In this document: positions 897 to 25,300 of the stretch, in pieces
Position numbering within the stretch: position 1 is the first letter of the stretch
Layout: every line of letters begins with the position of its first letter
Assembly (NCBI RefSeq): GCF_902459465.1
Contig: NC_047076.1
Span: 13,020,001 to 13,084,000 of the forward strand
Direction of reading: 5' to 3'
Source of the DNA: Asterias rubens
Taxonomy: Eukaryota
Length of the DNA: 64,000 nt
Position numbers and translations under genes: made by a program
Notes under the pieces: model-generated
What the model saw: only the letters and a program-made list of their open reading frames with translations
Told to the model about the DNA's origin: nothing
Database searches by the model: none

Positions 897-1149
897 CTAT
901 TGCCATGGTATAATCATGGAGGTAGAAATATGCAGTCGCATTTTTCAGGACTATTTGGAGAGACGACGACTATCAGCTCAGTTATGATGTTTACATGGCT
1001 TGCTTTGCTGACCATATTCAGAATCAAATAATTGTTCCGCCATTTGTGGTTCAATCTACCTCCATTGTTCAATTGAGCATTACAGGAGTTTGCGTGAGAC
1101 TTTGGTGATCTCTCTGCTCCTGGTTTAGGAGGTGTCAGGACAATTCGTA

Positions 1150-1260
1150 CCCTGGACACTTCGAACCTTTGACCTTTGCAAGGTACGAAATTACTTTGGA
1201 CACTTCGTACCTTTTTACAAGATACTTCGTATCTTCTTATAGACACTTCGTATATCTTTC
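1150..1260. repeat. Degenerate short direct-repeat array (ga(c/t)acttcg(a/t)a), possibly a transposon subterminal region
   Basis: At least four gacacttcgaa/gacacttcgta/gatacttcgta units at irregular spacing. Confidence 0.5.
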
Positions 1261-1778
1261 TCCATGCTCGTACATACTCAATCGGAATCTCTGCATCGTT
1301 TTTTTTTTTTTTTGTGCTGATGTTTATGAAATAAAAGCAAATCAATCTAACTATTTTATTGGGACCAAGGAGCCATTTTGACGATTGCGTTATTGTTTGA
1401 CTTTAAAATAATTTGGGTTTAAATATGAGCGGAAGATGTTGTCCTTGGTGGACATTTACGTATTACAAAATAATAATTTCACATTAACATTCACAACAAA
1501 AATGACTCTAGAAATTACCAACTGTAGCAACTTTGATAACTAAATCCAACATTTGCAAACCTTATTGAAAAAACATGGAGATACCTCCGCTTTAATATTT
1601 AAAGTGATGAGATGTCCGTCGAAATAATGAAGTGAGTGTATTAAATTACTGAATTGAGAATTCATCAATTGGTGCAAAGACCAGCTTAAGTAGACCCACC
1701 ACATAATACTTTCACTTATTTTATTTTATTTTTTTTCCTTTTCAAGGAGTATTTCTCAACTGAGAACGTGAAAACAAA

Positions 1779-2894
1779 ATGGATACCAACGAGACAATGT
1801 ACAACCCTACGACTATTTCGTGGCTGCCAAATACAACTATGACAACAATGAGTATCGGTATACCGTTTATCCACAGCTATCATGTAAGAGTCGTTGTGGG
1901 TGTTTTGTTCCTACTGATCGCGGTCATCAACATTACCGGTAACAGCATGGTCATTCTTGCTGTCATCTTCAGCAAGAAACTCAGAACATCAACAAATGTC
2001 TTTGTGGTAAGCCTCAGCTCTGCAGACCTTTTGGCAGGACTTGCGTTGCCAATGAGTGCAGTTGCTTTACTCACCCCTGGCAACAGCTGGCCGGGGTCGA
2101 CGGAAACCCCTTGTTACATCGCAGGCGTGCTTCTGTTCACCAGTTCCACTGCCAGTCTTTTCAACCTCGCTTCCATCGCTCTAAACCGGTTGACTCTTAT
2201 CAAGAGCCCAATGAAATGGTACCGTATTCTGTACACCAAATGCAACCTCGTTATCAATGTCGTATTCAATTGGATTGCCGCCATTGTCATCATGACAGTC
2301 CCTCCACTTTTCGGCATTGGTGACTATGGCTACGACAAGCAGCAGCACACGTGTACTGACCTGGACAACCACCCGAAGGCCAAGACGTTTAAACAGATTC
2401 AAACTTTCGGCTCCTACCCCATCCCATTTATCATCATCATCACCAGCTATATCATCATCTTCGTTCACGTCCGTCGCCACTTCAAGAAGCAGATGTATAA
2501 CGATGGCAACATCACGATCCCAGTCTCCTCCAGTTCCGGGAGCATCGACAACTTTCAGACATCAGACAACGCTGCCGTATTGCGTGCCTCCCGCCGGGAT
2601 CGGATCAGCCGACAACAACTCGAAATCACCAAAAATCTCTTTATGACAGTGTGTGCTTTCTTCATCTGCATAACTCCATACTGCATGGCTCTCTTTATTC
2701 CGAACAACGACCATTTCCTGTTGTTTGGAGGTGCGGTCTTCCTCATTAATAGCTGCGTCAACCCAATTATTTACGCAGCAAAGCACCCTCAGTTTAAAAA
2801 GGTTCTGCGTCTGATGCTACGATGCAAATACTCAGAGATAGAAGAGCCGTCGGATACCATAAAACACTTGAAAGCTTGCTGTTGCAAGTCATAA
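1779..2894 (+). CDS. Class A (rhodopsin-family) GPCR, paralogue A, 371 aa, intronless CDS; Moody/Tre1/melatonin-receptor-like NRx type
   Basis: Seven hydrophobic segments; TM1 GNxxV, TM2 SLSSADL, TM3 IALNRL, ECL2 Cys, TM6 CITPY, TM7 NSCVNPIIY; N-terminal N-glycosylation sequons; C-terminal Cys cluster. Confidence 0.95.
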   Translation: MDTNETMYNPTTISWLPNTTMTTMSIGIPFIHSYHVRVVVGVLFLLIAVINITGNSMVILAVIFSKKLRTSTNVFVVSLSSADLLAGLALPMSAVALLTPGNSWPGSTETPCYIAGVLLFTSSTASLFNLASIALNRLTLIKSPMKWYRILYTKCNLVINVVFNWIAAIVIMTVPPLFGIGDYGYDKQQHTCTDLDNHPKAKTFKQIQTFGSYPIPFIIIITSYIIIFVHVRRHFKKQMYNDGNITIPVSSSSGSIDNFQTSDNAAVLRASRRDRISRQQLEITKNLFMTVCAFFICITPYCMALFIPNNDHFLLFGGAVFLINSCVNPIIYAAKHPQFKKVLRLMLRCKYSEIEEPSDTIKHLKACCCKS

Positions 2895-4288
2895 GTCGGA
2901 GAACAATGCTCAGAAGCTGGAACTTTTTGTTGCTTATTTATTATTTAAAGTAATCACAATGAGGTCGGGTGAAAAAATAGTCTGGTACCGCTTCAATGAT
3001 GAAACATAGTTGTATCCATAGCTGGTTTGGGGGATCAGTCCAAAATATAGTTAGGCTTGAATATATTTTTGATAATTATATATTTTTTTCGTTGTAATGT
3101 ATTGTACGTTTATGTTAGTTGTCATACTTTAAATCCATAGCTTGGGTTCAAATCCGTTATGTGTACATACGAAACAGCGCATAACGATAACACTACAAAC
3201 AAGGAAATACCTTAGGCCTAATATCAAACTTATTTGTACAATTTCCCCCGAATTTCAACGTTTTCATAAAATGGTGACAGTGCGTTCATTTTTGACTGTC
3301 CTAACAAACCCTATACTGTCACCTCATTCTGGGTATAACTTTGCTATTCATACTTCTTATCTGTCTGCCTTTTGTAAAATCTAGATGTACCCATGGTGCT
3401 CTTTATTATACCTTTCCTCTTGATGGTTTCAGTTAAATGTTTATAAAGGTTTTTAGGGCTTTATCATGTTTGTATTTTTGTGTGAATTGTCAAATAAAAA
3501 AACCACAATAAACTATTTTAAACAAAAATTTGTGAGTCACTGCTCATAGTCTCTCCAATTTATATTGGTATCACCATTTCATATAATGCGCTATATAAAT
3601 GGAAATTATTATTATTATTATTATTTGATTTCACAATGGATGAAACGTACTGCATATCGTATGCTCAGTATACTCCCTTTTGGTTCATAGCCACCAAGTG
3701 TTTCTAGAAAAGAAACTTTGAAAAGATATAAATGTCCCACTTCTTCTAGATCCCTTCCCTATAATCCTTTGCCCCTCTTTTTACTGGATATGTTGTTTGA
3801 ACCTGGTTATGCCTCTGAAGAAGGTCCGGTTTTAATCGAAAGCGGAGGCCGTCCATAAAGGAATAAGTATATATTCCTCCATGGGCCATCTACCCTGCTC
3901 ATTTTATTCACAATGTCGTACACCGAGTTGGGTTTTTAATGTTAACTTTAAAACCGTTTATTTCCTTATACGTCTATAAAAAGTACTTGGCAAACAACTC
4001 TTCAAACATTCCAACTTAACAAAACTTCAAGGTTTTTTACCAAAGTACCCTGGAAAACAAGGTTTGTCCAAATAAACAAGTTCAAACTGGGTTTCGATTC
4101 TTTTATTAGAGTACATGTATACATTATACGCCTATATGATTCTTTAGTGACTCGCATTCCTTCTATACAGTATTATTATTCTCACCTTTCGAAATGTTCT
4201 CCAGGCTTATTTGCATAAATTTTGTTACCACCGAGCCTTTTGGTAGTTTTTCAAAGCAAAACCGTGGGACATGCTAAATGATTTTGAA

Positions 4289-4935
4289 CCTGCTAGTGAC
4301 GTTGACTGTATAATACGCGAACGATCGGCAACGGTAAATCTGAGGAAATGTTGTTGTGATTTGGTGCGGGCCACAAACGTGGTATAAAATAATTAGCTGT
4401 GGTGTTGTCTGAAAAGGGGTTAGCTGTTTTTATGTTATGCGGTCATAACTTCTGTTTTTAGAAAGAGAAAGTCAGCTTAATTAGTTCTGGGCATGGAGGA
4501 CCTAGGGCTTCCGATCCATACGTTCTTCTTCTAAATTTGAATCTGAACTATGCAGTCGGCAAAGCGTCTAAATGGAATCATGGCTGCCAAACCTTGGGAA
4601 ATACTGAATGTCACCTGCCAGTGACGTTGATTGTATCAATACGCGAACAATCGACAGCCAGAAGACTGATTTCATGTATTTGAGTAAAACTTACTATTGC
4701 ACTCAACGTTAATGCCGAGGCAATGTTGCTTCGATGTTGTTGACTTCAAACGTTGTGTAAAAGTTGAGCTGTGGTGTGGTTTGACAAAGGCAAGGTGTTT
4801 TTGTAGGCAATGCAGTCCTGGACTGTTTCGAAAGATCGAAAGAGAACAACCAGCTTAGGATGTTGGGCATGGGTGACCTAGAGCTTACATTCCAAAATTT
4901 TCTTCTGAACTTGAATTGGAATTATGTAGTAGGCA
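4289..4935 (+). repeat. Old degenerate tandem duplication (~325-370 bp units) upstream of GPCR-B, containing a TATA-like box and donor-like sites
   Basis: cctgctagtgacgttgactgtataatacgcgaac (4289) vs cctgccagtgacgttgattgtatcaatacgcgaac (~4613); both units end in atg(c/t)agt(c/a)ggcaaagc. Confidence 0.7.
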
Positions 4936-5149
4936 AAGCATTTCATTTCATTTCAAAATGTTATATTAAATAGAACATGAATCGCAGCCAAAAGCTGAAT
5001 TACTCATGGTTTACAATTAAAACAGCGACAAAGAAAAAAGAGAAGAAAAAAAATTAATTTGCATTAGCACCGTATTGAATCTTCACACAAACTTTTTGTA
5101 AAGAAGACAAGGAAGAAGTTTCCGTTTTAGACGTGGGAGAACACAAATC

Positions 5150-5245
5150 CTATTCATAAGGAAAACCCAAGGAGCCAGGTAGGGACCGAAAACCCCAAAT
5201 CAAGATCCAAGACTCCGGTTCGGGAATCGAACCGGGGTTCAGTGG
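5150..5245 (-). mobile_element. tRNA-derived SINE fragment (also in the duplicated copies at ~14140-14235 and ~16600-16700)
   Basis: Minus-strand Pol III B box GGTTCGATTCC; no tRNA cloverleaf. Confidence 0.5.
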
Positions 5246-5631
5246 GCATGCATAAACTATGGGGAAACTGAGTTTTGCTTAATGGTAAAACGACCTCAGC
5301 TCAAATACACCAGCTGTGGTAGGGATACCAACTTTGGTAAGAAAGCCCACACATACCATTCCCTTTTCGAATAAAACCCATATTGTTTCCATTTTTATAA
5401 CTATAATAAAAACTAAAAAGTTGTTAATTTCAGACATGACCGTTTTTAGCGTGACATAAAGTCTTGTGTTTCACTTTGTGCCTCTCGGATTAAACTATAC
5501 TTGACACATCTCGTAGTTGAAATACAAGAAACAACAAGTATTTGTACTACAAAATTCTCCACATAACTTCCTTACAATTTTTTATTTTTCAAGGAGTTTT
5601 CTCAACTGAGAACAATGACTGTGAACACAAA

Positions 5632-6768
5632 ATGGATATCAACGAGACAACTTCAAACTCTACGACTGTTTCATGGCTGCCGAACACAACAATGACTACA
5701 ACGAGTATCTCGGCTGTCCATAGCTATCCTGTAAGAGTCGTCTTGGGTGTTTGCTTCATCCTGATATCGGTCACTAGCATTACTGGTAATAGCATGGTCA
5801 TTCTTGCTGTCATATTCAGCAAGAAACTCCGAACATCAACTAATGTCTTCGTGGTAAGCCTCAGCTCTGCAGACCTTATGACAGGCCTGGCAATGCCAAT
5901 GAGTGCAGTTGCGCTGATCTCCCCTGGTAATAGCTGGCCGTGGTCGACGGAAGCTCCTTGTTACAACGCAGGCTTGCTTCTATACACAAGTGCCTGTGCC
6001 AGTCTCTACAACCTCGCTTCCATCGCTCTCAATAGGTTGATTCTTATCAAGAGTCCTATGAAATGGTACCGTATTCTGTACACCAAATGCAACCTCGTTA
6101 TTAATGTCGTGATCATATGGATTGTAGCATTTGCTATTCTGATAGTCCCTCCTCTTTGCGGCATTGGTGACTATGGCTACGGTAAGAAGCAGCACACGTG
6201 CTCAAACCTGGAGACCCACCCGAAGGCCAAAATGTTTGAAAGGATTCAACTCTTCGCCGGTTACCCCCTCCCATTAATCATCATCATAACCAGCTATGTC
6301 ATGATATTCTATCACGTCCGTCGCCACTTCAAGAAGCAGATGGATGCGGCAACTGACACTAAGCACGAGTCTCTCGGCTCCGGGGACAACCCGACCTTCC
6401 AGAGGTCCGGGGACAACCCGACCTTCCAGAGGTCAGACAGCACTGTCGTCATATGTGCCGAACGCCGGGATCGGCTCAATCGACAACAACTCGAGATCAC
6501 CAAAAATCTCTTCATTACAGTCTGTGCTTTCTTCATCTGTATAACCCCTTACGCAGTGGCCCTTTACTTCCCGAACAACGAGAGTTTCCTGGTGATCGGT
6601 GGTGTGGTATTCCTCAGCAACAGCTTCCTCAACCCAATAATATACGCAGCAAAACACCCGCAGTTTAAGAGGGTTCTGCGTCTGATCCTGCGATGTAAAT
6701 ACTCAGAGATAGAAGAGCCGTCGGATACCATCAAATACTTGACAGCCAAATGCTGTTGCAAATCATAA
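5632..6768 (+). CDS. Class A GPCR, paralogue B copy 1, 378 aa
   Basis: Same 7TM motifs as A. The likely start is ATG 5632, homologous to the A and C starts. The ORF-track TTG start at 5542 lies upstream of a splice acceptor ending at 5593. Confidence 0.95.
   Translation: MDINETTSNSTTVSWLPNTTMTTTSISAVHSYPVRVVLGVCFILISVTSITGNSMVILAVIFSKKLRTSTNVFVVSLSSADLMTGLAMPMSAVALISPGNSWPWSTEAPCYNAGLLLYTSACASLYNLASIALNRLILIKSPMKWYRILYTKCNLVINVVIIWIVAFAILIVPPLCGIGDYGYGKKQHTCSNLETHPKAKMFERIQLFAGYPLPLIIIITSYVMIFYHVRRHFKKQMDAATDTKHESLGSGDNPTFQRSGDNPTFQRSDSTVVICAERRDRLNRQQLEITKNLFITVCAFFICITPYAVALYFPNNESFLVIGGVVFLSNSFLNPIIYAAKHPQFKRVLRLILRCKYSEIEEPSDTIKYLTAKCCCKS
6379..6434 (+). repeat. In-frame 27-bp tandem duplication (SGDNPTFQR x2) in ICL3 of GPCR-B
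   Basis: tccggggacaacccgaccttccagagg twice; also at 17835-17890. Confidence 0.95.
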
Positions 6769-7329
6769 ATAATTGAGAGGTCAGGATAAACAGAAGCTGG
6801 AATTTTTTGTTTGCTTTGTTATTATTGAAAATAATCACAATGAGGTTACTAGATGAAACATTGGTCTGTACCGCTTAAAAAGCTGGTACCCTGGTTTGGG
6901 GAATCAGTCCAAAAACGAGCAAGGCCAGTTTTGTACGTTTGTGTATAAGTTTTCATACTTTATATCCATAGCTCAGTTCGAGTTCAAAGCATTTGTTTAT
7001 AAAATAGTGCCTAACAATATTACTATATAGGAGAAATACTGATCAAAGTTATTGGTACAATTTTGCCCGGTTTTAAACGTATTCATGAACAGCATGCTTA
7101 ACCAAGATGGCAGTACATGTTATATTAATGTTTCGTTTAAAGGTGTGAGGTTTGTTATTATGTAATAACTATTTTATATTAAATACAATTTATCGGAAAC
7201 AACCGAATGCTTCTGTGCTTAATCAAGGGTACCGCATTCAACTATTTCTGTGACGTCACTCTATTGATGAAAGTGTAGATTATTTTTAAGAATCTACACT
7301 TAACTGTAAATTTGTAATGAATGCATACA

Positions 7330-8106
7330 CTCAATGGGAGACTTTTTGAAAGCTCTGCCACTAGAGGGCAGCAGACCTACCAGGTAAGGGTGCACAACTC
7401 GTACAGTAAACAATGGTAAATGCTAAAAATTCAAAAATACTCAAAAAATATTTAGAAGTCTCTCAGCCTCTTGAAAATTAAATCAGATACATTGTCATAC
7501 AACTAAACTTAAGATTTCTTCTCAATTTTTGGTAGGTCAGCATTTTGGAATTTTTGCTAATTACCCGAGAAGAAACACTCCCAAAAACTCATGCACACCG
7601 CTTGTTATCGTTGGGGAACTCGTGTCCAGTACGTCCTGTTCCAGAACAGTTTGGTTTATGCTGGCAATGTGTTATGAACAACAAAATACAGTTTGGCTAA
7701 ATCTAAAATACAAAATCAAAGACACGCAAAACACAAAGTATTTGCTGTCAGTGACCGTCACTCATGCTTCTCCTATTCCTAAAGTTGTTGACATTACCTG
7801 GTGAAGAGCGCCCTCTCTTGGTGATTGGCAGATAGTCAAAAGTTACGAAATAAGGCATGAAAATAATCTCACTTTTCGAGTGAGAAATTTGTTTGCATGT
7901 AAAAACGTAAGTTATGGTATGTTGTTTACATGCTAAAACTTAGAATAAAATTATTTCTGTAACATTGTTTTACTCATTTCTCAAAAATTACAGCACCTCA
8001 GCAGGTAATATTTTAGGGGAAGCTTTCTACTGTAATTATCTTCAATCTGTTTAAGTTTAATGTAAATCCGTGGACATTGTGTGAAAAATGTACCCAGACC
8101 CTTTAA
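7330..8106 (-). mobile_element. Non-autonomous DNA-transposon-like element with TTAA-AGG terminus (Kolobok/T2-like); duplicated at ~18786-19562
   Basis: Right end gtacccagaccctTTAA; no coding capacity; left end not clearly defined. Confidence 0.45.
7356..7373 (+). promoter_or_regulatory. CTCF-like motif (duplicated at 18812-18829)
   Basis: tgccactagagggcagca matches the CCASYAGRKGGCRS core. Confidence 0.45.
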
Positions 8107-8270
8107 TGGGTTGTTCTATTTTGTTATAATTCTTTAACATTGGTAACAACTGACACACCCCTTCTTGTGTACAAGCACTTTTGTCAGACAAACCAGTGTT
8201 GTCCTTTCTACTGTACTTAGTCCAGTTTGTTTTTCAACTTCTTCTGCCTGCCCTTCTATAACAATTTAGC

Positions 8271-8612
8271 TCATACCAATTAGTAAACACAACGGAAACT
8301 GTATTTATTCATAATTAATGATGATATTGTCGAAAACTAACGCCTTCGCATTTAATTAGATGAGCATTGAGCCAGATAAAAGCCTTGAAAAGCTATTGTG
8401 TCCATTTTATCCTTACAAAAAATATTCGAGAGCCGATTATTGTTCCCAATGGGAGCTTGTACTTTTATACAAACATTACCGAAAGGGTAAAAAATTGTGC
8501 ATAAATATTAAACTATCTTTTAAAAATTGAACTACGATTCCAGTTGTTTACTGCAAGAATCTTGAAAAATTGGTTTTCAGAAACTCGGGCGGTGCAGTGA
8601 CTAGAGGGTTAA
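8271..8612 (-). mobile_element. piggyBac-like terminal fragment, present only in duplication copy 1
   Basis: Minus strand begins TTAA-CCCTCTAGTCACTG. The matching empty site in copy 2 is a TTAA at 19858-19861. Confidence 0.6.
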
Positions 8613-8696
8613 ACTATAATGATATCATAATATTATAAGCAATTATCTTTCTCAAAAATAGTTAGTAATGGGATTGTATTGTATTGTATTGTATAT

Positions 8697-8856
8697 TGGG
8701 TGCGTTCGTTTAGCTCCCCTGGGTCTACCCCGGTGTGTGGCGGGGTTTTTTTTTCTTTCTAGGACGAACGTGGGTAATTATCTGCACACGTTCGTCCTGG
8801 GAAAAAAAAACTCCACACACCGGGGTCGACCCAGGGAAGCTAAACGAACGCACCCA
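8697..8856. mobile_element. 160-bp near-perfect palindromic MITE, present only in duplication copy 1
   Basis: tgggtgcgttcgtttagctcccctgggtctacccc...ggggtcgacccagggaagctaaacgaacgcaccca; absent at ~19960; related element at 29791-30020. Confidence 0.85.
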
Positions 8857-10097
8857 TTTTTGTGTCATGTTTTATTCCAAACTGGAACATACCCCCATAA
8901 CCCTGGGGAGGGTAACAATATTATAACAATAATGTAGCATCATGTAGCCTAGCCTTGCGATATTTCAAATAGACAAAAAAAAAGGAATCGTACAGTTTTG
9001 AAAGTGTATTTTCTTTTGGATCGAATTCCACTTCAAAATAGTGTAATTCTTGTGATGACAATTTGCTCACATGGTCATCCGTTCATTTTGTATAATTTGA
9101 AAGACTTGCTATAATTATGTTCTTACTGTTGTATTCAGTCATAGACTCTTACATCCTAGCTCACATGACATTGGTCGCACCCTTTTTCTATTGTACACAT
9201 ACAAATACCCGGGAAAACAAGTTTCGATAATAGTGCAATTGTAATAATTGCAATTTCGATAATAGCGGCACGATCTTTGATATTGCTCGTCTTTATTATA
9301 AAAGTTTATACTAATTGAACAATTATTGTTTTGAAATAAGGAAATAAGGACCCTTTATTTTTCTGTGGTTTCATTGGCTATATATCCTTTACCTATACGT
9401 CATACTTTCGTTCTACATGTAATTGTACTTATTGGTACTTATTGGTAATAAACCAGACAAACTTCCGGGAAACTTGCCCGTGATCTTGGCCGTCTGTATT
9501 TAAGCAGCCGCGATTAAGCGACTGACTTCATACCATAGATTGACCAACAACTTCAAGCAATCCAGATACATGTATCCTGATATTGCTGTTCGTTTGTTGA
9601 AACATTCAGTTCTAGAAAGTTGGTTTAAAGTTAAGCGGTTCTGTCTGGACAATAAAGGTTAGTTGTTTAATTAATTAATTCAGAATTTTATGTTTGTTTT
9701 TTATTTCAAAAGAGCCTATTTGAATCAATGTGTTGTCCCTTTTCGTTAACTGTTTCCGAACTGTCTGATGGGTAATTCAAGTCAGAAGTCCAGCTATTAA
9801 ATACCGAGTTTGGCACGGTCCAACTTTGGTTATCAAAGCTCACACTGTTCCTTAATATAACACCCAGGGTAGCCTTTGTTTATATAATTATATGGATAAA
9901 ATATGGACGTACCGGGATACAGTTTTTAGTTTTTTGTTTTTCGAATAACAGACTGAGTTCAAACATATCGAGGTTGAAAGAAACCTAATTACAGAGAACA
10001 TTAAATTTTTAGTTTTAACATTTAGTTTTTTTACTTTGTCACTTTGCAGATTTATAAGTGGTTTTTCTCATAAGCACAAGGATACCAAACTAAACTC

Positions 10098-11213
10098 ATG
10101 GATATCAACGACTCGGAGACAATATTAAACTCTACGGCAGTTTCATGGACGGTCAACACAACAATGACCACAATGGCCAGCCTGTCTCTTCACAGCTATC
10201 CTGAAAGAGTCGTTGCAGGCTTTCTCTTCCTACTGATCGCGGTCATCAACATTACCGGTAACAGCATGGTCATTCTTGCTGTCATCTTCAGCAAGAAACT
10301 CCGAACATCAACAAATGTCTTCGTGGTAAGTCTCAGCTCTGCAGACCTGTTAGCAGGACTGGCAATGCCAATAAGTGCAGTTGCTTTACTCACCCCTGGC
10401 AACAGCTGGCCGGGGTCGACGGAAGCTCCTTGTTACATCGCAGGTTTGCTCTTGTACACAAGTTCTAGTGCCAGTCTTTTCAACCTCGCTTCCATCGCTC
10501 TCAATAGGTTGATTCTTATCAAGAGCCCAATGAAATGGTACCGTATTCTGTACACCAAATGCAACCTCGTTATCAATGTCGTTGTCATATGGATTGTCGC
10601 CATTGCCATCATGACGGTCCCTCCACTTTTAGAAATTGGCAGCTTTGGCTACGACAAGCAGCACCATACATGTAGCGACCTCGACACCCACCTGAAGGCC
10701 AAGACGTTTGAAAGGATTCAAACTTTTGCCTCCTACCCCATCCCATTTATCATCATCATCACCAGTTACATCATCATCTTCGTTCACGTCCGTCGTCACT
10801 TTAAGAAGCAAATAAGTAACGAAACCAACGTCACTAACCCAGGCACAGGCTCTTCCAGTTCTGGGGTCAATCCGACCTTCCAGACGTCAGACAGCACTGC
10901 CGTCTTGCGTGCCGGTCGCCTGGATCGCCTCATTCGACAACAACTCGAGATCACCAAAAATCTCTTTATGGCAGTTTGTGCTTTCTTCATCTGCATAACC
11001 CCTTACAGCGTGGCCCTCTTCATTCCGAACAACGACCGTTTCCTGTTGTTTGGAGGTGTGGTCTTCTTGTGCAACAGCTGCGTCAACCCAATTATATACG
11101 CAGCAAAGCACCCACAGTTTAAGAAGGTTCTGCGTCTAATGCTGCGATGCAAACATTCAGAGATAGAAGAGCCGTCGGATGCCTTGAAAAAACTGACGGC
11201 TTGTTGCAAATAA
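10098..11213 (+). CDS. Class A GPCR, paralogue C copy 1, 371 aa
   Basis: Same 7TM motifs. 5'UTR acceptor tttgcag| at 10049; candidate exon 1 with TCAGTT initiator (9606) and AAAG|GTTAGT donor (9657). Confidence 0.95.
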   Translation: MDINDSETILNSTAVSWTVNTTMTTMASLSLHSYPERVVAGFLFLLIAVINITGNSMVILAVIFSKKLRTSTNVFVVSLSSADLLAGLAMPISAVALLTPGNSWPGSTEAPCYIAGLLLYTSSSASLFNLASIALNRLILIKSPMKWYRILYTKCNLVINVVVIWIVAIAIMTVPPLLEIGSFGYDKQHHTCSDLDTHLKAKTFERIQTFASYPIPFIIIITSYIIIFVHVRRHFKKQISNETNVTNPGTGSSSSGVNPTFQTSDSTAVLRAGRLDRLIRQQLEITKNLFMAVCAFFICITPYSVALFIPNNDRFLLFGGVVFLCNSCVNPIIYAAKHPQFKKVLRLMLRCKHSEIEEPSDALKKLTACCK

Positions 11214-15500: not shown

Positions 15501-17445
15501 GTACCCTGGAAAACAAGGTTTGTCCAAATAAACAAGTTCAAACTGGGTTTCGATTCTTTTATTAGAGTACATGTATACATAATACGCCTATATGATTCTT
15601 TAGTGACTCGCATTCCTTCTATACAGTATTATTATTCTCACCTTTCGAAATGTTCTCCAGGCTTATTTGCATATATTTTGTTACCACCAAGCCTTTTGGT
15701 AGTTTTTCAAAGCAAAACCATGGGACATGCTAAATGATTCTGAACCTGCTAGTGACGTTGACTGTATAATACGCGAACGATCGGCAACGGTAAATCTGAG
15801 GAAATGTTGTTGTGATTTGGTGCGGGCCACAAACGTGGTATAAAATAATTAGCTGTGGTGTTGTCTGAAAAGGGGTTAGCTGTTTTTATGTTATGCGGTC
15901 ATAACTTCTGTTTTTAGAAAGAGAAAGTCAGCTTAATTAGTTCTGGGCATGGAGGACCTAGGGCTTCCGATCCATACGTTCTTCTTCTAAATTTGAATCT
16001 GAACTATGCAGTCGGCAAAGCGTCTAAATGGAATCATGGCTGCCAAACCTTGGGAAATACTGAATGTCACCTGCCAGTGACGTTGATTGTATCAATACGC
16101 GAACAATCGACAGCCAGAAGACTGATTTCATGTATTTGAGTAAAACTTACTATTGCACTCAACGTTAATGCCGAGGCAATGTTGCTTCGATGTTGTTGAC
16201 TTCAAACGTTGTGTAAAAGTTGAGCTGTGGTGTGGTTTGACAAAGGCAAGGTGTTTTTGTAGGCAATGCAGTCCTGGACTGTTTCGAAAGATCGAAAGAG
16301 AACAACCAGCTTAGGATGTTGGGCATGGGTGACCTAGAGCTTACATTCCAAAATTTTCTTCTGAACTTGAATTGGAATTATGTAGTAGGCAAAGCATTTC
16401 ATTTCATTTCAAAATGTTATATTAAATAGAACATGAATCGCAGCCAAAAGCTGAATTACTCATGGTTTACAATTAAAACAGCGACAAAGAAAAAAGAGAA
16501 GAAAAAAAATTAATTTGCATTAGCACCGTATTGAATCTTCACACAAACTTTTTGTAAAGAAGACAAGGAAGAAGTTTCCGTTTTAGACGTGGGAGAACAC
16601 AAATCCTATTCATAAGGAAAACCCAAGGAGCCAGGTAGGGACCGAAAACCCCAAATCAAGATCCAAGACTCCGGTTCGGGAATCGAACCGGGGTTCAGTG
16701 GGCATGCATAAACTATGGGGAAACTGAGTTTTGCTTAATGGTAAAACGACCTCAGCTCAAATACACCAGCTGTGGTAGGGATACCAACTTTGGTAAGAAA
16801 GCCCACACATACCATTCCCTTTTCGAATAAAACCCATATTGTTTCCATTTTTATAACTATAATAAAAACTAAAAAGTTGTTAATTTCAGACATGACCGTT
16901 TTTAGCGTGACATAAAGTCTTGTGTTTCACTTTGTGCCTCTCGGATTAAACTATACTTGACACATCTCGTAGTTGAAATACAAGAAACAACAAGTATTTG
17001 TACTACAAAATTCTCCACATAACTTCCTTACAATTTTTTATTTTTCAAGGAGTTTTCTCAACTGAGAACAATGACTGTGAACACAAAATGGATATCAACG
17101 AGACAACTTCAAACTCTACGACTGTTTCATGGCTGCCGAACACAACAATGACTACAACGAGTATCTCGGCTGTCCATAGCTATCCTGTAAGAGTCGTCTT
17201 GGGTGTTTGCTTCATCCTGATATCGGTCACTAGCATTACTGGTAATAGCATGGTCATTCTTGCTGTCATATTCAGCAAGAAACTCCGAACATCAACTAAT
17301 GTCTTCGTGGTAAGCCTCAGCTCTGCAGACCTTATGACAGGCCTGGCAATGCCAATGAGTGCAGTTGCGCTGATCTCCCCTGGTAATAGCTGGCCGTGGT
17401 CGACGGAAGCTCCTTGTTACAACGCAGGCTTGCTTCTATACACAA
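12522..17445 (+). repeat. Nested direct tandem duplication, period 2461 bp (12522-14984 / 14983-17445)
   Basis: Constant offset of 2461 (ATG 14627 vs 17088); junction tatacac-aa-tttgtgagtcac with a 2-nt microhomology. Confidence 0.93.
14627..15091 (+). pseudogene. Truncated chimeric GPCR-B (N-terminus to mid-TM3 fused in frame to intergenic DNA), 154 aa
   Basis: Identical to B through ...AGLLLYT, then ICESLLIVSPIYIGITISYNALYKWKLLLLLLFDS* read from duplicated non-coding sequence. Confidence 0.85.
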
Positions 17446-18224
17446 GTGCCTGTGCCAGTCTCTACAACCTCGCTTCCATCGCTCTCAATAGGTTGATTCT
17501 TATCAAGAGTCCTATGAAATGGTACCGTATTCTGTACACCAAATGCAACCTCGTTATTAATGTCGTGATCATATGGATTGTAGCATTTGCTATTCTGATA
17601 GTCCCTCCTCTTTGCGGCATTGGTGACTATGGCTACGGTAAGAAGCAGCACACGTGCTCAAACCTGGAGACCCACCCGAAGGCCAAAATGTTTGAAAGGA
17701 TTCAACTCTTCGCCGGTTACCCCCTCCCATTAATCATCATCATAACCAGCTATGTCATGATATTCTATCACGTCCGTCGCCACTTCAAGAAGCAGATGGA
17801 TGCGGCAACTGACACTAAGCACGAGTCTCTCGGCTCCGGGGACAACCCGACCTTCCAGAGGTCCGGGGACAACCCGACCTTCCAGAGGTCAGACAGCACT
17901 GTCGTCATATGTGCCGAACGCCGGGATCGGCTCAATCGACAACAACTCGAGATCACCAAAAATCTCTTCATTACAGTCTGTGCTTTCTTCATCTGTATAA
18001 CCCCTTACGCAGTGGCCCTTTACTTCCCGAACAACGAGAGTTTCCTGGTGATCGGTGGTGTGGTATTCCTCAGCAACAGCTTCCTCAACCCAATAATATA
18101 CGCAGCAAAACACCCGCAGTTTAAGAGGGTTCTGCGTCTGATCCTGCGATGTAAATACTCAGAGATAGAAGAGCCGTCGGATACCATCAAATACTTGACA
18201 GCCAAATGCTGTTGCAAATCATAA
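17088..18224 (+). CDS. Class A GPCR, paralogue B copy 2, 378 aa (protein identical to B1)
   Basis: ORF-track translations of B1 and B2 are identical; offset 11456. Confidence 0.95.
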   Translation: MDINETTSNSTTVSWLPNTTMTTTSISAVHSYPVRVVLGVCFILISVTSITGNSMVILAVIFSKKLRTSTNVFVVSLSSADLMTGLAMPMSAVALISPGNSWPWSTEAPCYNAGLLLYTSACASLYNLASIALNRLILIKSPMKWYRILYTKCNLVINVVIIWIVAFAILIVPPLCGIGDYGYGKKQHTCSNLETHPKAKMFERIQLFAGYPLPLIIIITSYVMIFYHVRRHFKKQMDAATDTKHESLGSGDNPTFQRSGDNPTFQRSDSTVVICAERRDRLNRQQLEITKNLFITVCAFFICITPYAVALYFPNNESFLVIGGVVFLSNSFLNPIIYAAKHPQFKRVLRLILRCKYSEIEEPSDTIKYLTAKCCCKS

Positions 18225-21200
18225 ATAATTGAGAGGTCAGGATAAACAGAAGCTGGAATTTTTTGTTTGCTTTGTTATTATTGAAAATAATCACAATGAG
18301 GTTACTAGATGAAACATTGGTCTGTACCGCTTAAAAAGCTGGTACCCTGGTTTGGGGAATCAGTCCAAAAACGAGCAAGGCCAGTTTTGTACGTTTGTGT
18401 ATAAGTTTTCATACTTTATATCCATAGCTCAGTTCGAGTTCAAAGCATTTGTTTATAAAATAGTGCCTAACAATATTACTATATAGGAGAAATACTGATC
18501 AAAGTTATTGGTACAATTTTGCCCGGTTTTAAACGTATTCATGAACAGCATGCTTAACCAAGATGGCAGTACATGTTATATTAATGTTTCGTTTAAAGGT
18601 GTGAGGTTTGTTATTATGTAATAACTATTTTATATTAAATACAATTTATCGGAAACAACCGAATGCTTCTGTGCTTAATCAAGGGTACCGCATTCAACTA
18701 TTTCTGTGACGTCACTCTATTGATGAAAGTGTAGATTATTTTTAAGAATCTACACTTAACTGTAAATTTGTAATGAATGCATACACTCAATGGGAGACTT
18801 TTTGAAAGCTCTGCCACTAGAGGGCAGCAGACCTACCAGGTAAGGGTGCACAACTCGTACAGTAAACAATGGTAAATGCTAAAAATTCAAAAATACTCAA
18901 AAAATATTTAGAAGTCTCTCAGCCTCTTGAAAATTAAATCAGATACATTGTCATACAACTAAACTTAAGATTTCTTCTCAATTTTTGGTAGGTCAGCATT
19001 TTGGAATTTTTGCTAATTACCCGAGAAGAAACACTCCCAAAAACTCATGCACACCGCTTGTTATCGTTGGGGAACTCGTGTCCAGTACGTCCTGTTCCAG
19101 AACAGTTTGGTTTATGCTGGCAATGTGTTATGAACAACAAAATACAGTTTGGCTAAATCTAAAATACAAAATCAAAGACACGCAAAACACAAAGTATTTG
19201 CTGTCAGTGACCGTCACTCATGCTTCTCCTATTCCTAAAGTTGTTGACATTACCTGGTGAAGAGCGCCCTCTCTTGGTGATTGGCAGATAGTCAAAAGTT
19301 ACGAAATAAGGCATGAAAATAATCTCACTTTTCGAGTGAGAAATTTGTTTGCATGTAAAAACGTAAGTTATGGTATGTTGTTTACATGCTAAAACTTAGA
19401 ATAAAATTATTTCTGTAACATTGTTTTACTCATTTCTCAAAAATTACAGCACCTCAGCAGGTAATATTTTAGGGGAAGCTTTCTACTGTAATTATCTTCA
19501 ATCTGTTTAAGTTTAATGTAAATCCGTGGACATTGTGTGAAAAATGTACCCAGACCCTTTAATGGGTTGTTCTATTTTGTTATAATTCTTTAACATTGGT
19601 AACAACTGACACACCCCTCGTGACAGTGCCTTATGTACAAGCACTTTTGTCAGACAAACCAGGATTGTCATTTCTACTGTACTTAGTCCAGTTTGTTTTC
19701 CAACTTCTTCTGCCTGCCCCTGTACCATCTTGATGGTTTCCGTTCAATGTTTTTAGAGCTTTATTATACTAATGGTATACTGTATTTTGTGTAAATTGTC
19801 AGATAAATAATAATACAAAACTATTTTATAAACACTTTGTGAGTAACTGATGGTGTTTTAAACTATAATGATATAATTATTTTTATAAGCAATTATCTTT
19901 CTCAAAAATAGTTAGTAATGGGATTGTATTGTATTGTATTATATTGTATTGTATTGTATCATGTTTTATTCCAAACTGGAACATACCCCCACAACCTTGG
20001 GGAGGGTAACAATGTTATAACAATAATGTAGCATGTATAGCCTAGCCTTGAGATATTTCTCAATAGAAAAAAAAAATCATAGTTTTGGAAGTGAATTTTC
20101 TTTTGGATCGATTTCCACTTCAAAATAGTGTTATTCTTGTGATGACAATGTGCTCACATGGTCATCCGTTCATTGTATAATTTGAAAGACTTGCTATAAT
20201 TATGTTCTTACTGTTGTATTCAGTCATAGACTCTTGCTCACATTATAGGCAACTGGTAATTCTAGACAGAAAATATCGAGCAAACAATAACTGCAGTGAC
20301 ACTTTTTGAGGACGTCTTGTTTGATGATGTTACATCCTAGCTCACATGACATTGGTCGCACCTTTTTTCTATTGTACACACACACAAATACCCGGGAAAA
20401 CAAGTTTCGATATAGTGCAATTGTAAACTATAGCGGCACGATCTTTGATATTGCTCGTCTTTATTATAAAAATGTATACTTGAACAATATTATTGTTTTG
20501 AAATAAGGAAGTAAGGACCCTTTATTTTTCTGTGGTTTCATTGGCTATATCCTTTACCTATACGTCATACTTTCGTTTTACATGTAATTGTACTTATTGG
20601 TTCTTATTGGTAATAAACCAGACAAACTTCCGGGAAACTTGCCCGTGATCTTGGCGGTCTGTATTTAAGCAGCCGCGATTAAGCGACTGACTCCATACCA
20701 TAGATTGACCAACAACTTCAAGCAATCCAGATACATGTATCCTGATATTGCTGTTCGTTTGTTGAAACATTCAGTTCTAGAAAGTTGGTTTAAAGTTAAG
20801 CGGTTCTGTCTGGACAATAAAGGTTAGTTGTTTAATTAATTAATTCAGAATTTTATGTTTGTTTTTTATTTCAAAAGAGCCTATTTGAATCAATGTGTTG
20901 TCCCTTTTCGTTAACTGTTTCCGAACTGTCTGTGATGGGTAATTCAAGTCAGAAGTCCAGCTATTAAATACCGAGTTTGGCACGGTCCAACTTTGGTTAT
21001 CAAAGCTCACACTGCTCCCTTAATATAACACCCAGGGTAGCCTTTGTTTATATAATTATATGGATAAAGTATGGACGTACCGGGATACAGTTTTTAGTTT
21101 TTTGTTTTTCGAATAACAGACTGAGTTCAAACATCTCGAGGTTGAAAGAAACCTAATTACAGAGAACATTAAATTTTTAGTTTTAACATTTAGTTTTTTT

Positions 21201-21265
21201 ACTTTGTCACTTTGCAGATTTATAAGTGATTTTTCTCATAAGCACAAGGATACCAAACTAAACTC

Positions 21266-22381
21266 ATGGATATCAACGACTCGGAGAAAATATCAAACTC
21301 TACGGCAGTTTCATGGACGGTCAACACAACAATGACCACAATGGCCAGCCTGTCTCTTCACAGCTATCCTGAAAGAGTCGTTGCAGGCTTTCTCTTCCTA
21401 CTGATCGCGGTCATCAACATTACCGGTAACAGCATGGTCATTCTTGCTGTCATCTTCAGCAAGAAACTCCGAACATCAACAAATGTCTTCGTGGTAAGCC
21501 TCAGCTCTGCAGACCTGTTAGCAGGACTGGCAATGCCAATAAGTGCAGTTGCTTTACTCACCCCTGGCAACAGCTGGCCGGGGTCGACGGAAGCTCCTTG
21601 TTACATCGCAGGTTTGCTCTTGTACACAAGTTCTAGTGCCAGTCTTTTCAACCTCGCTTCAATCGCTCTCAATAGGTTGATTCTTATCAAGAGCCCAATG
21701 AAATGGTACCGTATTCTTTACACCAAATGCAACCTCGTTATCAATGTCGTTGTCATATGGATTGTCGCCATTGCCATCATGACGGTCCCTCCACTTTTAG
21801 AAATTGGCAGCTTTGGCTACGACAAGCAGCACCATACATGTAGCGACCTCGACACCCACCTGAAGGCCAAGACGTTTGAAAGGATTCAAACTTTTGCCTC
21901 CTACCCCATCCCATTTATCATCATCATCACCAGTTACATCATCATCTTCGTTCACGTCCGTCGTCACTTCAAGAAGCAGATAAGTAACGAAACCAACGTC
22001 ACTAACCCAGGCACAGGCTCTTCCAGTTCTGGGGTCAATCCGACCTTCCAGACGTCAGACAGCACTGCCGTCTTGCGTGCCGGTCGCCTGGATCGCCTCA
22101 ATCGACAACAACTCGAGATCACCAAAAATCTCTTTATGGCAGTTTGTGCTTTCTTCATCTGCATAACCCCTTACAGCGTGGCCCTCTTCATTCCGAACAA
22201 CGACCGTTTCCTGTTGTTTGGAGGTGTGGTCTTCTTGTGCAACAGCTGCGTCAACCCAATTATATACGCAGCAAAGCACCCACAGTTTAAGAAGGTTCTG
22301 CGTCTAATGCTGCGATGCAAACATTCAGAGATAGAAGAGCCGTCGGATGCCTTGAAAAAACTGACGGCTTGTTGCAAATAA
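21266..22381 (+). CDS. Class A GPCR, paralogue C copy 2, 371 aa
   Basis: Differs from C1 by T8K, L10S and I>N in RL(I/N)RQQ, plus about five synonymous changes seen by eye. Confidence 0.95.
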   Translation: MDINDSEKISNSTAVSWTVNTTMTTMASLSLHSYPERVVAGFLFLLIAVINITGNSMVILAVIFSKKLRTSTNVFVVSLSSADLLAGLAMPISAVALLTPGNSWPGSTEAPCYIAGLLLYTSSSASLFNLASIALNRLILIKSPMKWYRILYTKCNLVINVVVIWIVAIAIMTVPPLLEIGSFGYDKQHHTCSDLDTHLKAKTFERIQTFASYPIPFIIIITSYIIIFVHVRRHFKKQISNETNVTNPGTGSSSSGVNPTFQTSDSTAVLRAGRLDRLNRQQLEITKNLFMAVCAFFICITPYSVALFIPNNDRFLLFGGVVFLCNSCVNPIIYAAKHPQFKKVLRLMLRCKHSEIEEPSDALKKLTACCK

Positions 22382-25300
22382 ATCAAGAGACCAAACTTTT
22401 ATCTGAAAATGTTTTTGTTACATTATTCAAGATAACCACATGAGGTTGGACGAAACATTCATAGTTTGGTGCCGCTTCAACATGATGAGACTTTGTTTGA
22501 AGCATATACGGATTTATTTTAACATATAAGTATACATATTTTATAATCTGTTTTCCCAATACGTTCGAGATCGTTGACAACAAAAAAAGAGAAGAGGCAA
22601 TTCACTCGGGTGGATTCGAGTTGTCATAATGCCCTTTACATAATGGCTAAAAGCGCGCAATTATACACAGAATGGAAGAAAAATGGTGAACAGAAAACTA
22701 GCCAAGCTTCTTGTTTCAGGCCAGTGCCAAGACGTGTTCTGTATGGAGTACTTTTAGTAAACAATGTATTATGGATGCGGTTGTTTGATTACCATGTTAT
22801 TAACAGAATTATCATAACTAAACTTCAGATCTCCTAGTTGTTTCATGCCAATGGACATACCAACATGGGCATACATCCGTTCTGTATTACGGAGTTCTAG
22901 TAAACAATGTACAGATTATAAATACTTTGTTGTTTGATTATGAGTGGTTAGTTACAGATCATGTTATGTTATTATTCAGAATTATCATATGAATACATTT
23001 AATCAGATATTCTTGTGTCTTTTTAATGCAGGGTAACGGTTTTGTTTATTTTGTTACATAGCCTACTATTGCCTTTAAATATGAATGCATTCTCTTTTGT
23101 TTTAAGCTCTGTGAATTTTTTTGGCAGCTATTTACTGTCTCCATGAATTAGGGGGCCTACAGGTGTAATTCAATTATGGAACTCTCATAAGGAAGTAACT
23201 TCATCTGCTGCATTACTGTTTTGATTTTTGATTTATTTATTGTTAAGTTATTAAAAAAACATCTGAAGTTGGCAAGCTATAGCTCTATGATTATACGCAC
23301 GATCCTTTATTTTTTCAACCCCATCCGGGTTCGGGAAACAGTTTCATAATGTTCGCGTTCCGACATCCATTGACTATGAGGCTCCCATTTCAAACAAGAG
23401 TGAAACTTAAGGGGTGCAGTAGGGCAAATTTCAAAAAGACTTATAATTCTTTGTTTCCATATCTATGTTCTTGTCCTTTATTTTCCGACATAAGTACATT
23501 TTAAATTGTTCGGGTCAAAACTGTCACCATAGATATGTCAGCTCCCAAAAAGCTCTTCTAGCAAGATGTAAATAAAAGTGTGCATTTTAAATTGCCCCCC
23601 CCCCCCCCCAAAAAAAAAAAAAAAAATTAAGCCAAAAACCGTAATACTTCATATCTACCAAACACAAACTATCAAAATCAGACGACACATTTTAGGGGTC
23701 ATTTGAAACAATTAAAACTTAATTTACATCAAATTGGGCTTCATGGACGGTGATGAAAGCCTACGTATTTTAAATAAAAAATTAGTAAATCGTTCCGTGT
23801 ATTAGTTACCCCTTCTGGATGATTCACTGGATCGTTGGGTTACCACCACACTTACGGGTGTAAGCCTTGTCGTTACCGCAGTATACTCAATCTGAACTTC
23901 TTTCCGGTGTTTTTCCCTTAATTTTGAACTTGATAACCATGTGAATTAGTTCTTTCACTTTGTGCTCATCTCTCATGACACGGTTAAAGTATTATCTGTT
24001 TACTTGTTTGTTTATTTATGTATTTATTCATTTATTTCAATTATTTTTTCTCAAGTTGGTTTTTATGTCAATTTGTTGCTGATTTTATGCATGCGTTTAA
24101 CGAACAACCAGAATTAACGAATAAGAAATAATTTCCCCAACTAATGGTTTGTGATTGTTATTGCAAACTCGTTATGGATTTATGGTCAACTTAATACACA
24201 ATTCAAGTATTATTTTGGAAACTATAGGTCTTCATAAAACCCAATGCGAATATAAACTAGATCTTTGTTTTTACAGTATACTTATTTAATGATTTGAGAA
24301 TTTCCACTTGTATAATATAGTGTTATTGTATAGTTACCGATCGTTTGTATTGTATTTGCACACATTTTTTTGACAAGCCCATTTTAATTTCCCAAGTGAG
24401 GAATAATGTATATTTCTATCTATCTATCTATCTATCTATCTAATTGTAATAATACAACTTGGAGATGACGTAGGGTGTGCCCCCCCCCCCCCAGCACAAC
24501 TCAGCCTACCCCCACCCGAAAATACTTGTTTTGTGAAACATGTTGGCTATAAAATTACCAGTCATCATTTCAAAAGGTGGTCGCGTTTTTTAGGCATCAC
24601 CGAAAATCCGTCGCGGTTTTCGTAGGAAGATTAATCCACAAATGGAATACATAGTATATGAAACGTTTCTTGGGTGAAACGTTCTCGTGGCGAAATTGTT
24701 TTTCTCTAACTAGAAAGGACTTGTTTCTCAGTCAACAACTGCTTCTTTAATACATTTTAAGTTTTTATTAAGGGGGTTTAGGAGACGTGGTGCACCTCTA
24801 CCAATAACCAAATTCAGCTTCCCTTTAACGGACCAATCTCAAGTTCACAAAGATCCGGTTGATAAAAGAAAACCTGTTTATAAAGCAAATTTTCTTATAA
24901 ATCAGAAAGGAAATGTAGTGGGTTAGAAAATGGGGAATGTTGTGGCTTAATCTCCGGAAACATGTTGTGACTCTGATGGGAAAAGCAGCTGTTGAAAATG
25001 TTCGAGAATAATATCATAAAACGATCATGGCCCATGGCTATAATACCCTACAGCTATAACTAACAAAGTTTGTGTTGAAATTTTGACACTATCCGAGCTG
25101 GACATTAGTTATTTACAGCGCCCTCTTTTGACACACTGACAATCCGTTGTCAACCCAGGCCAGACAAGTGACAACATCCACACAATAGAAAAGTGATACT
25201 ATCTAGAAGCTATTACAGGCATATACCAGAGGCACTCGTAGTGCTAATTGTTGTTCTTTGTACAATCGGCTAGTGATGCACTCCTCAGCAAACTTTTGAT

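What the first reader, a model, noticed from the sequence alone, without database searches (positions are those of the whole stretch)
1779..23270. Actively amplifying GPCR array built by nested tandem duplications (A-B-C-truncated B-B-C)
Seen: three older paralogues, a ~9 kb duplication carrying B and C, and within it a 2461-bp duplication, with both breakpoints resolvable to the base. Known: echinoderm genomes have lineage-expanded intronless class A GPCR families that are candidate chemoreceptors. Inference: this is birth-and-death evolution of an orphan receptor family caught in progress, and it is probably copy-number polymorphic.
Basis: partly seen in the sequence, partly recalled or inferred. 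Interest (0 to 1): 0.7.

Follow-up and report, generated by a model that had tools for sequence, protein, structure and literature searches.

The report
Starfish receptor gene array, old and new duplications
This is a real head-to-tail cluster of five orphan receptor genes plus one truncated copy in the starfish Asterias, but the 9-kb duplication is millions of years old and kept similar by gene conversion; only the small 2.5-kb inner duplication is new, so this is a clear but ordinary case of receptor-family evolution.

Summary
The window holds A, B1, C1, truncated Bt, B2 and C2, all on the + strand. All are intronless class-A GPCR reading frames. Unit 1 (3105-12110, 9,006 bp) is followed by unit 2 (12116-23270). 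Unit 2 contains a 2,461-bp tandem copy (12522-14984 = 14983-17445, 2 mismatches).

- **Outer junction J1 (12110/12116) is old.** It is shared with the sister species A. amurensis, with a 53-bp exact match across it. It therefore predates the species split and is not "in progress".
- **The two A. rubens units are a mosaic.** One 3.88-kb tract holding B has no difference, while other tracts differ by 2-5%. Their flanks group by species (10 informative sites to 0). This points to concerted evolution by gene conversion or unequal crossing-over.
- **Each species keeps five intact genes, but only three are orthologous pairs.** That is genuine birth-and-death.
- **Inner junction J2 (14984) is young.** It has 2-bp microhomology and is absent from the A. 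amurensis locus. Its junction words occur in contigs of five runs from four samples in two studies, so it is not an assembler artefact.

Copy-number polymorphism could not be decided. The chemoreceptor role is inference only. The scan has already reported two similar GPCR arrays elsewhere in this genome.

The parts
1779..2894 (+). Gene A, intact 371-aa class-A GPCR, orthologue of A. amurensis P0003
   Evidence: 94.3% nt over 278-3031; 96% aa, sister with 100/100 support
3105..12110 (+). Unit 1 of the outer tandem duplication (9,006 bp; upstream flank uU, B1, C1, C downstream flank dC)
5632..6768 (+). Gene B1, intact 378 aa from the ATG, orthologue of P0006. It carries an A. rubens-specific in-frame 27-bp tandem duplication at 6379-6434.
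4285..8162 (+). 3.88-kb tract with no difference from 15741-19618 of unit 2 (B, 1.35 kb upstream, 1.4 kb downstream)
7333..7844 (.). ~512-bp high-copy dispersed repeat inside the identical tract (second copy about 18789-19300)
10098..11213 (+). Gene C1, intact 371 aa; 8 nt (3 aa) differences from C2; orthologue of P0001
12100..12152 (+). Junction J1 of the outer duplication (dC ends 12110, filler, unit 2 starts 12116). This 53-mer is identical in A. amurensis.
   Evidence: X3 contig 12039-12277 spans it
12116..23270 (+). Unit 2 of the outer duplication, enlarged by the inner duplication
12522..14984 (+). Inner duplication, copy 1 (private differences at 13702 and 14090)
14627..15091 (+). Bt, truncated B: N-terminus to mid-TM3 (119 aa), read on into intergenic DNA for 35 codons to a stop (154 aa from the ATG)
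14955..15014 (+). Junction J2 of the inner duplication (B TM3 at 14984 joined to the equivalent of 12522; AA microhomology)
14983..17445 (+). Inner duplication, copy 2
17088..18224 (+). Gene B2, identical to B1
21266..22381 (+). Gene C2, followed by the ancestral downstream flank, which is colinear with A. amurensis

Best explanation
This is a small subfamily cluster of intronless, orphan class-A GPCR genes, probably in Asterias rubens. It lies between a MINDY4-like gene and conserved right-hand DNA, and it evolves by repeated tandem duplication, deletion and homogenisation.

**Shown.**
1. A non-homologous tandem duplication of a segment running from the upstream flank uU to the flank downstream of C created junction J1 before A. 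rubens and A. amurensis separated.
2. After the split, the two units in A. rubens exchanged sequence. One 3.88-kb tract holding B is now identical and carries a derived 27-bp duplication. Other tracts stay 2-5% apart.
3. A. amurensis kept J1 only as a relic without the adjoining C1/B2-type genes, and it retains two D-type paralogues that A. rubens lacks.
4. Very recently, a second non-homologous tandem duplication of 2,461 bp (2-bp microhomology) inside unit 2 copied the B promoter region and the first 119 codons. This left a truncated Bt. Its junction exists in real DNA of several samples.
5. The intact genes are under purifying selection (dN/dS 0.17-0.40).

**Inferred.**
- Homogenisation works by gene conversion or unequal crossing-over between the units.
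- The receptors are chemosensory, like their Acanthaster relatives.
- Bt is a by-product without a receptor function.
For: - **Architecture and identities:**
- **J1 is shared.** The multiple alignment of J1 +/-250 bp shows the same dC-filler-uU junction downstream of A. amurensis P0004. A 53-bp exact match spans it. 11202-12574 aligns contiguously to amurensis 23213-24579 at 94.7%. A. amurensis has two dC copies at 94.7%. An X3 contig spans J1.
- **Concerted evolution.** In the four dC copies, 10 informative sites group by species and 0 group by position. In uU the counts are 6 to 1 and 2 to 0.
- **Mosaic identity**: 0 differences in 3,878 bp; 14 events in 656 bp; 23 in 949 bp; 8 in the 1,116-bp CDS; 43 in 897 bp.
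- **The B1 = B2 identity arose after the split.** Both carry the 9-aa SGDNPTFQR duplication, which P0006 and all paralogues lack.
- **Birth-and-death.** A/P0003, B/P0006 and C/P0001 are orthologous pairs. P0002 and P0004 have no A. rubens orthologue.
- **J2 is real and absent from the A. amurensis locus.** That locus has no counterpart. The 60-mer centred on J2 is held at share 1.00 (5 of 5 sampled words) by X2 and by four runs from three samples of a second study. It is unique in the genome.
- **Constraint:** interspecies dS 0.03-0.07, dN/dS 0.17-0.40.
- **Family:** (asteroid relatives 54-69%; at least 52 relatives in the genome, the next best 48%). The Acanthaster relatives lie on the 4,163,896-bp scaffold that houses the ApOR2/3/4 cluster (PMC5442662).
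Against: - The exact ancestral content of the duplicated unit cannot be reconstructed. Beyond about 460 bp after J1, the amurensis copy is only 88% like either A. rubens copy, so later rearrangements blur the history.
- The perfect 3.88-kb identity could be inflated by consensus polishing of near-identical repeats. I could not test this with raw reads.
- Some assembly-specific letters are unsupported. The 16-bp deletion at 12183 appears in none of the four runs laid, and at several other places the only letter in the contigs of the likely source sample (X1) differs from the assembly.
- No expression or ligand data were obtained.
Confidence: 0.78

Rival explanations
1. One reading: a single recent ~9-kb tandem duplication in A. 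rubens, followed by a nested 2.5-kb duplication, as an amplification in progress.
For: - High overall identity of the units, 96.9-99.4%.
- C1 and C2 are sisters on the protein tree, with P0001 outside.
- B1 and B2 are identical.
Against: - The same junction, filler bases included, is present in A. amurensis.
- Divergence between the units is strongly heterogeneous: 0 in 3.9 kb against about 4.8% downstream of C. The latter equals the interspecies level of 3.5-6.4%.
Confidence: 0.08
2. Assembly artefact: two haplotypes laid in tandem (false duplication), or an assembler-made inner repeat.
For: - Unit identity of 97-99% is in the range of allelic divergence in a heterozygous marine invertebrate (inference).
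- Several assembly-specific letters are unsupported in the runs laid.
Against: - There is no N or gap at either junction.
- J1 occurs in an independent assembly of another species and in an X3 contig.
- In X1, a contig starts at the branch point 12119. The X4 and X5 contigs stop matching there, and X5's runs on into the A-downstream context. Two left contexts therefore exist.
- J2 words occur in contigs of five runs from two studies.
- Contig word depths in X1 are roughly 3:2 for the part present three times against the part present twice: 250+131 against 243.5. This is weak, because the tool warns against reading depth.
Confidence: 0.04
3. The outer junction is old, but the present unit 2 interior (uU part 2 through B2) is not a converted old copy. 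It is a fresh re-insertion or re-duplication of unit 1 sequence by unequal crossing-over on the old junction, so gene number did rise recently in A. rubens.
For: - A. amurensis has no B-type gene after J1, and its post-J1 flank switches to an 88% lineage after about 460 bp.
- The B tract is 100% identical and carries post-split derived characters.
Against: - A 2.1%-divergent tract (3629-4284) lies between two near-identical tracts, which a single event does not explain.
- Deletion in A. amurensis explains the same data.
Confidence: 0.1

Closest known systems
Acanthaster planci candidate olfactory receptors (ApORs), scaffold-10 cluster (Roberts et al. 2017, PMC5442662)
   Same: - Rhodopsin-type GPCRs of starfish in tandem arrays.
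- The nearest Acanthaster relatives of A/B/C (54-69% aa) lie on the same 4,163,896-bp scaffold as that cluster.
   Different: - I did not show that the relatives are ApOR2/3/4 themselves.
- ApOR expression in tube feet and sensory tentacles is shown for Acanthaster only. Nothing is known here.
- The Asterias genes form their own post-divergence clade.
Sea urchin surreal-GPCRs (rapidly expanded lineages of rhodopsin-type GPCRs; named in PMC5442662 and PMC7042368)
   Same: - A lineage-specific expansion of clustered class-A GPCRs in an echinoderm.
- Candidate chemoreceptors.
   Different: - This is a different echinoderm class.
- No orthology was tested.
- This subfamily is small (3-7 genes per starfish species) and fairly conserved (dN/dS 0.2-0.4).
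Birth-and-death plus gene conversion in vertebrate olfactory and other receptor gene clusters (general knowledge)
   Same: - Tandem duplication and lineage-specific loss.
- Truncated pseudogene by-products.
- Patchy homogenisation between neighbouring duplicates.
   Different: - Independent origin of the family.
- Here both junctions are non-homologous (microhomology or filler) rather than products of recombination between repeats.
Melatonin, aminergic and 'moody' receptors (automatic names of the database relatives)
   Same: Class-A alpha-group-like sequence. N at 3.49 (NRL) recalls the NRY of melatonin receptors (recalled from memory). The best solved matches are the beta-3 adrenergic receptor and melatonin or melatonin-related receptors at E 1e-25 to 1e-20.
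   Different: - There is no aminergic Asp at 3.32; by my counting from R3.50 the residue is Leu.
- TM7 has NPIIY, not the NAxxY of melatonin receptors (recalled from memory).
- Similarity is generic, spread over many receptor types.
- The names are automatic, not evidence of ligand.

Membership tests
Class A (rhodopsin-type) GPCR, Pfam 7tm_1 | Full-length match to PF00001 above the gathering score | tested here: met
   135-142 bits against a cutoff of 30.5, profile positions 1-260 of 260, for A, B1, C1, B2 and C2. Bt matches positions 1-69 only.
Class A (rhodopsin-type) GPCR, Pfam 7tm_1 | Signature residues: N1.50, D2.50, C3.25 with an ECL2 Cys, [DE]RY, W4.50, P5.50, CWxP, NPxxY | tested here: met
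   GNSMV, SSAD, PCY, TC[ST], YP[IL]P and NPIIY are present in all. The IWI (W4.50) pattern is found in B and C only; A has NWI at that place. Two variants are invariant in all nine sequences: NRL instead of DRY (R3.50 kept) and CITP instead of CWxP (P6.50 kept, W6.48 replaced by Ile).
Aminergic receptors (adrenergic, serotonin, histamine names given by sources) | Asp at 3.32 in TM3 as counter-ion for the amine (established knowledge) | tested here: not met
   Counting back from R3.50 in ...PCYIAGLLLYTSSSASLFNLASIALNRL..., position 3.32 is Leu. The numbering is my own and not structure-based.
Melatonin receptors | Orthology to MT1/MT2, and NRY plus NAxxY motifs (motifs recalled from memory) | tested here: inconclusive
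   melatonin receptors score E 2e-21 to 2e-22, no better than the beta-3 adrenergic receptor (3.6e-25). The motifs here are NRL and NPIIY. No phylogeny with true melatonin receptors was made.
Echinoderm lineage-expanded candidate chemoreceptor GPCRs (surreal-GPCR / ApOR kind) | Single-exon coding region, tandem clustering, species- or clade-specific expansion | tested here: met
   Uninterrupted ORFs. Head-to-tail array. An Asterias-specific clade of A/B/C/D types, with separate Acanthaster and Patiria expansions. At least 52 relatives in clusters across the genome.
Echinoderm lineage-expanded candidate chemoreceptor GPCRs (surreal-GPCR / ApOR kind) | Expression in sensory organs (tube feet, terminal tentacles) | not testable with these tools
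   No run on record as RNA held the stretch.
Duplication in progress (species-specific, recent) | Junction absent from the sister species and near-zero divergence between copies | tested here: not met
   Outer duplication: J1 is present in A. amurensis, and divergence reaches about 4.8%.
Duplication in progress (species-specific, recent) | The same test applied to the inner 2,461-bp duplication | tested here: met
   No J2 or truncated B in the amurensis locus. Two differences in 2,461 bp. Junction words in five runs.
Concerted evolution by gene conversion or unequal crossing-over | Duplicates older than a speciation group by species, and identity is mosaic | tested here: met
   Site patterns of 10 to 0, and 6 to 1 and 2 to 0. 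A zero-difference tract of 3,878 bp lies next to tracts of 2-5%. The derived 27-bp duplication is shared by B1 and B2.

The most novel reading that the evidence does not exclude
The inner duplication made a new, transcribed three-helix mini-receptor (Bt). It keeps the full B promoter region and is common or fixed in wild A. rubens. It could modulate trafficking or signalling of the full-length B receptor. The perfectly identical 3.9-kb B tract would then be maintained by selection for dosage rather than by chance conversion.
Probability: 0.06. Interest if true: 0.5.

Novelty: new member of a known kind. Interest (0 to 1): 0.3.

Why it matters
The locus is a compact, base-resolved example of how an invertebrate receptor cluster turns over. 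An old duplication junction survives in two species while the genes around it are swapped, lost or homogenised, and a fresh non-homologous duplication creates a truncated gene.

It also carries a methodological warning: high identity between tandem copies does not date a duplication. It gives Asterias a candidate counterpart of the crown-of-thorns olfactory receptor cluster. It does not change what is known about GPCR family evolution.

Tried and rejected
- **Read depth as a test of false duplication.** All four runs were Logan contigs. The tool states that depth cannot be read as copy number, so I report the rough 3:2 ratio only as weak support.
- **Direct view of J2 in laid contigs.** No listed piece spans 14984, and 155 pieces were not shown. 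I replaced this by a 60-mer word search.
- **Copy-number polymorphism.** The J2 words were missing from X3, X4, X5 and others that hold 30-59% of the region. They were also missing from X1, a second run of the J2-positive sample S1. Absence is therefore uninformative.
- **Expression.** No RNA holder was found, and both read tools are exhausted.
- **Extra receptor fragments in the A. rubens window.** None were found by tblastn.
- **Full reconstruction of the ancestral array.** I abandoned this, because the uU flanks exist in three to four copies per species with conflicting affinities.
- **Divergence time.** PMC11090083 gives about 28 My for the two Asterias species. My memory of a trans-Arctic split near 3.5 My differs, so I give only relative ages.
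Full report
**1. What is there**

The window is G000:C16:13020001-13084000 of a 417.6-Mb, 150-contig genome. The nearest named proteins are from Asterias amurensis at 97%. Earlier notes of this scan call the genome Asterias rubens. I did not verify the species name independently.

Six + strand ORFs match Pfam 7tm_1:
- A: 1779-2894, 371 aa
- B1: ATG at 5632 to 6768, 378 aa
- C1: 10098-11213, 371 aa
- Bt: 14627-15091, which matches only the first 69 of 260 profile positions
- B2: 17088-18224
- C2: 21266-22381

The full-length proteins keep the class-A landmarks (GN in TM1, SSAD in TM2, C3.25 with an ECL2 Cys, P5.50, NPIIY; the W4.50 pattern IWI in B and C, NWI in A). Two departures are invariant in all nine Asterias sequences: NRL for DRY and CITP for CWxP. 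Position 3.32 is Leu by my counting, so these are not amine receptors, whatever the automatic names say. Solved-structure matches are generic, at E 1e-25 to 1e-17 across adrenergic, melatonin, serotonin and adenosine receptors.

**2.

Self-BLAST gives:
- unit 1, 3105-12110 (9,006 bp);
- unit 2, 12116-23270;
- inside unit 2, a head-to-tail copy with period 2,461 bp (12522-14984 = 14983-17445, 99.92%).

A, B and C are 80-87% alike at the nucleotide level, with pairwise dS of 0.36-0.48. The window has no N. The J2 120-mer occurs once in the genome, and its two halves occur at the expected places.

**3. The outer junction is old**

I assembled the orthologous A. amurensis interval from five overlapping loci. 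Its order is: a MINDY4-like gene, P0003, P0002, P0006, P0004, P0001, then 10 kb without a receptor gene.

Left and right flanks are colinear with the window (3-238 at 98.7%; 23270 onward at 93-96%). By nucleotide identity and by tree, A = P0003, B = P0006 and C = P0001. P0002 and P0004, a D type, have no A. rubens orthologue.

The stretch 11202-12574 runs straight across J1, and it aligns contiguously to the DNA downstream of P0004 at 94.7%. The multiple alignment shows the same junction in both species: the C-type downstream flank ending ...CATCTGAAGTT, the same filler, then the uU flank. A 53-bp exact match spans it. A. amurensis also has two copies of the C downstream flank, 94.7% alike. 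A contig of run X3 covers 12039-12277 across J1.

A junction with identical filler cannot arise twice, so the outer duplication predates the species split. One genome paper puts that split at about 28 My (PMC11090083); I recall younger estimates.

**4. Why the copies nevertheless look young**

Differences between the units are not spread evenly:

| Stretch of unit 1 | Differences from unit 2 |
|---|---|
| 3105-3628 | 2 events |
| 3629-4284 | 14 events (2.1%) |
| 4285-8162 | none in 3,878 bp |
| 8162-9148 | scrambled by indels |
| 9149-10097 | 23 events (2.4%) |
| C coding region | 8 (0.7%; dS 0.020) |
| 11214-12110 | 43 events (4.8%) |

The last value equals the interspecies level for the same flank (3.5-6.4%). 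At 2% divergence, a 3.9-kb run without a difference has a probability near e^-78, so one age does not fit.

Among the four copies of the C downstream flank, 10 informative sites group the copies by species and none group them by position. The uU flank gives 6 to 1 and 2 to 0.

B1 and B2 share a derived in-frame 27-bp duplication (SGDNPTFQR twice, third intracellular loop). The amurensis orthologue and all paralogues lack it. The identical tract also holds a young, high-copy 512-bp dispersed repeat.

Together this is the signature of concerted evolution after the split, by gene conversion or unequal crossing-over. The mechanism is inferred. I cannot exclude that consensus polishing exaggerated the perfect identity.

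**5. Birth-and-death is real, but older and two-sided**

Both species hold five intact genes in about 23 kb between the same anchors, and only three are orthologous pairs.
- A. rubens lacks the D type. That type's dS to A is 0.27-0.33, so it predates the split and was lost.
- A. amurensis lacks genes next to J1. About 190 bp stand there where A. rubens has 6.5 kb with Bt and B2.
- A. amurensis carries its own relic: a 22-codon A-type 3' fragment directly behind P0006. This is another duplication breakpoint inside a receptor gene.

Orthologue and paralogue dN/dS values are 0.17-0.40, so the intact genes are constrained.

**6. The inner duplication is young and real**

Copies 1 and 2 share all 15 unit-2-specific variants and differ at two sites, both private to copy 1. 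The junction joins ...TATACACAA of B TM3 to TTTGTGAG... of the intergenic flank with a 2-bp overlap. This is a non-homologous, replication- or end-joining-type event, not recombination between repeats.

The amurensis locus has no counterpart.

I searched a 60-mer in which 28 of 30 words are junction-specific. All 5 sampled words were held by X2 (sample S1, the likely source) and by four runs from three samples of a marine-metagenome study. J2 is therefore not an assembler artefact, and it occurs in more than one sample.

X1, a second run of S1, held none of the words, so absence elsewhere says nothing about polymorphism.

Contig word depths in X1 are about 250+131 for the part present three times and 243.5 for the part present twice. 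This is compatible with the assembly, but the tool warns against such use.

**7. Bt**

Bt keeps 2.1 kb of B upstream DNA and 119 B codons, then reads 35 codons of intergenic DNA to a stop. It lacks TM4-7 and is most simply a by-product. Another note of this scan treats it separately.

**8. Family context**

Relatives at 54-69% exist in Acanthaster and Patiria, each with its own small expansion. The Asterias A/B/C/D clade is younger than the split from an unnamed asteroid sequence, P0005. The genome holds at least 52 more distant relatives in clusters.

The Acanthaster relatives lie on the 4,163,896-bp scaffold on which Roberts et al. described a tandem cluster of candidate olfactory receptors, including ApOR2-4.

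**9. Verdict**

- This is a new member of a known kind. The scan already reported two similar GPCR arrays elsewhere in this genome.
- Interest is modest.

Noticed in passing
window 7333-7844 and about 18789-19300: A ~512-bp dispersed repeat. Copies 94-97% identical lie on nearly every chromosome (6,338 first-look candidates). It is a young SINE- or MITE-like element, and the A. amurensis locus has no counterpart.
   Followed up: partly
window 6379-6434 and 17835-17890: An in-frame 27-bp perfect tandem duplication (SGDNPTFQR x2) in the third intracellular loop of B1 and B2. It is absent from the amurensis orthologue and from all paralogues.
   Followed up: yes
L017:18417-18482 (A. amurensis, directly behind P0006): A 22-codon fragment identical to the C-terminus of A. 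rubens gene A, followed by an A-type downstream flank. It is a relic of another tandem duplication whose breakpoint lay inside a receptor gene.
   Followed up: partly
window 12183: Unit 2 of the assembly lacks 16 bp (AACAGCGCATAACGAT) that all contigs of four runs carry, including the contig that spans J1. This is either a private allele or a consensus error.
   Followed up: partly
window 3-238: 98.7% identical to the end of the A. amurensis MINDY4-like gene (Pfam MINDY-3_4_CD). It is the conserved left anchor of the array.
   Followed up: partly
window 32824-33352: A tandem repeat with a period of about 101 bp and copies 97.6-98.1% alike.
   Followed up: no
window 8162-9148 versus 19618-20329: The stretch between B and C is the only part of the two units that is scrambled by many indels (up to 121 bp). 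It includes an ATTGT microsatellite at 19923-19970. It may mark the edge of the conversion tract.
   Followed up: no
window 61432-62211: Another first-stage note places a dynactin p50 / kinesin heavy chain head-to-head promoter here. I did not examine it.
   Followed up: no
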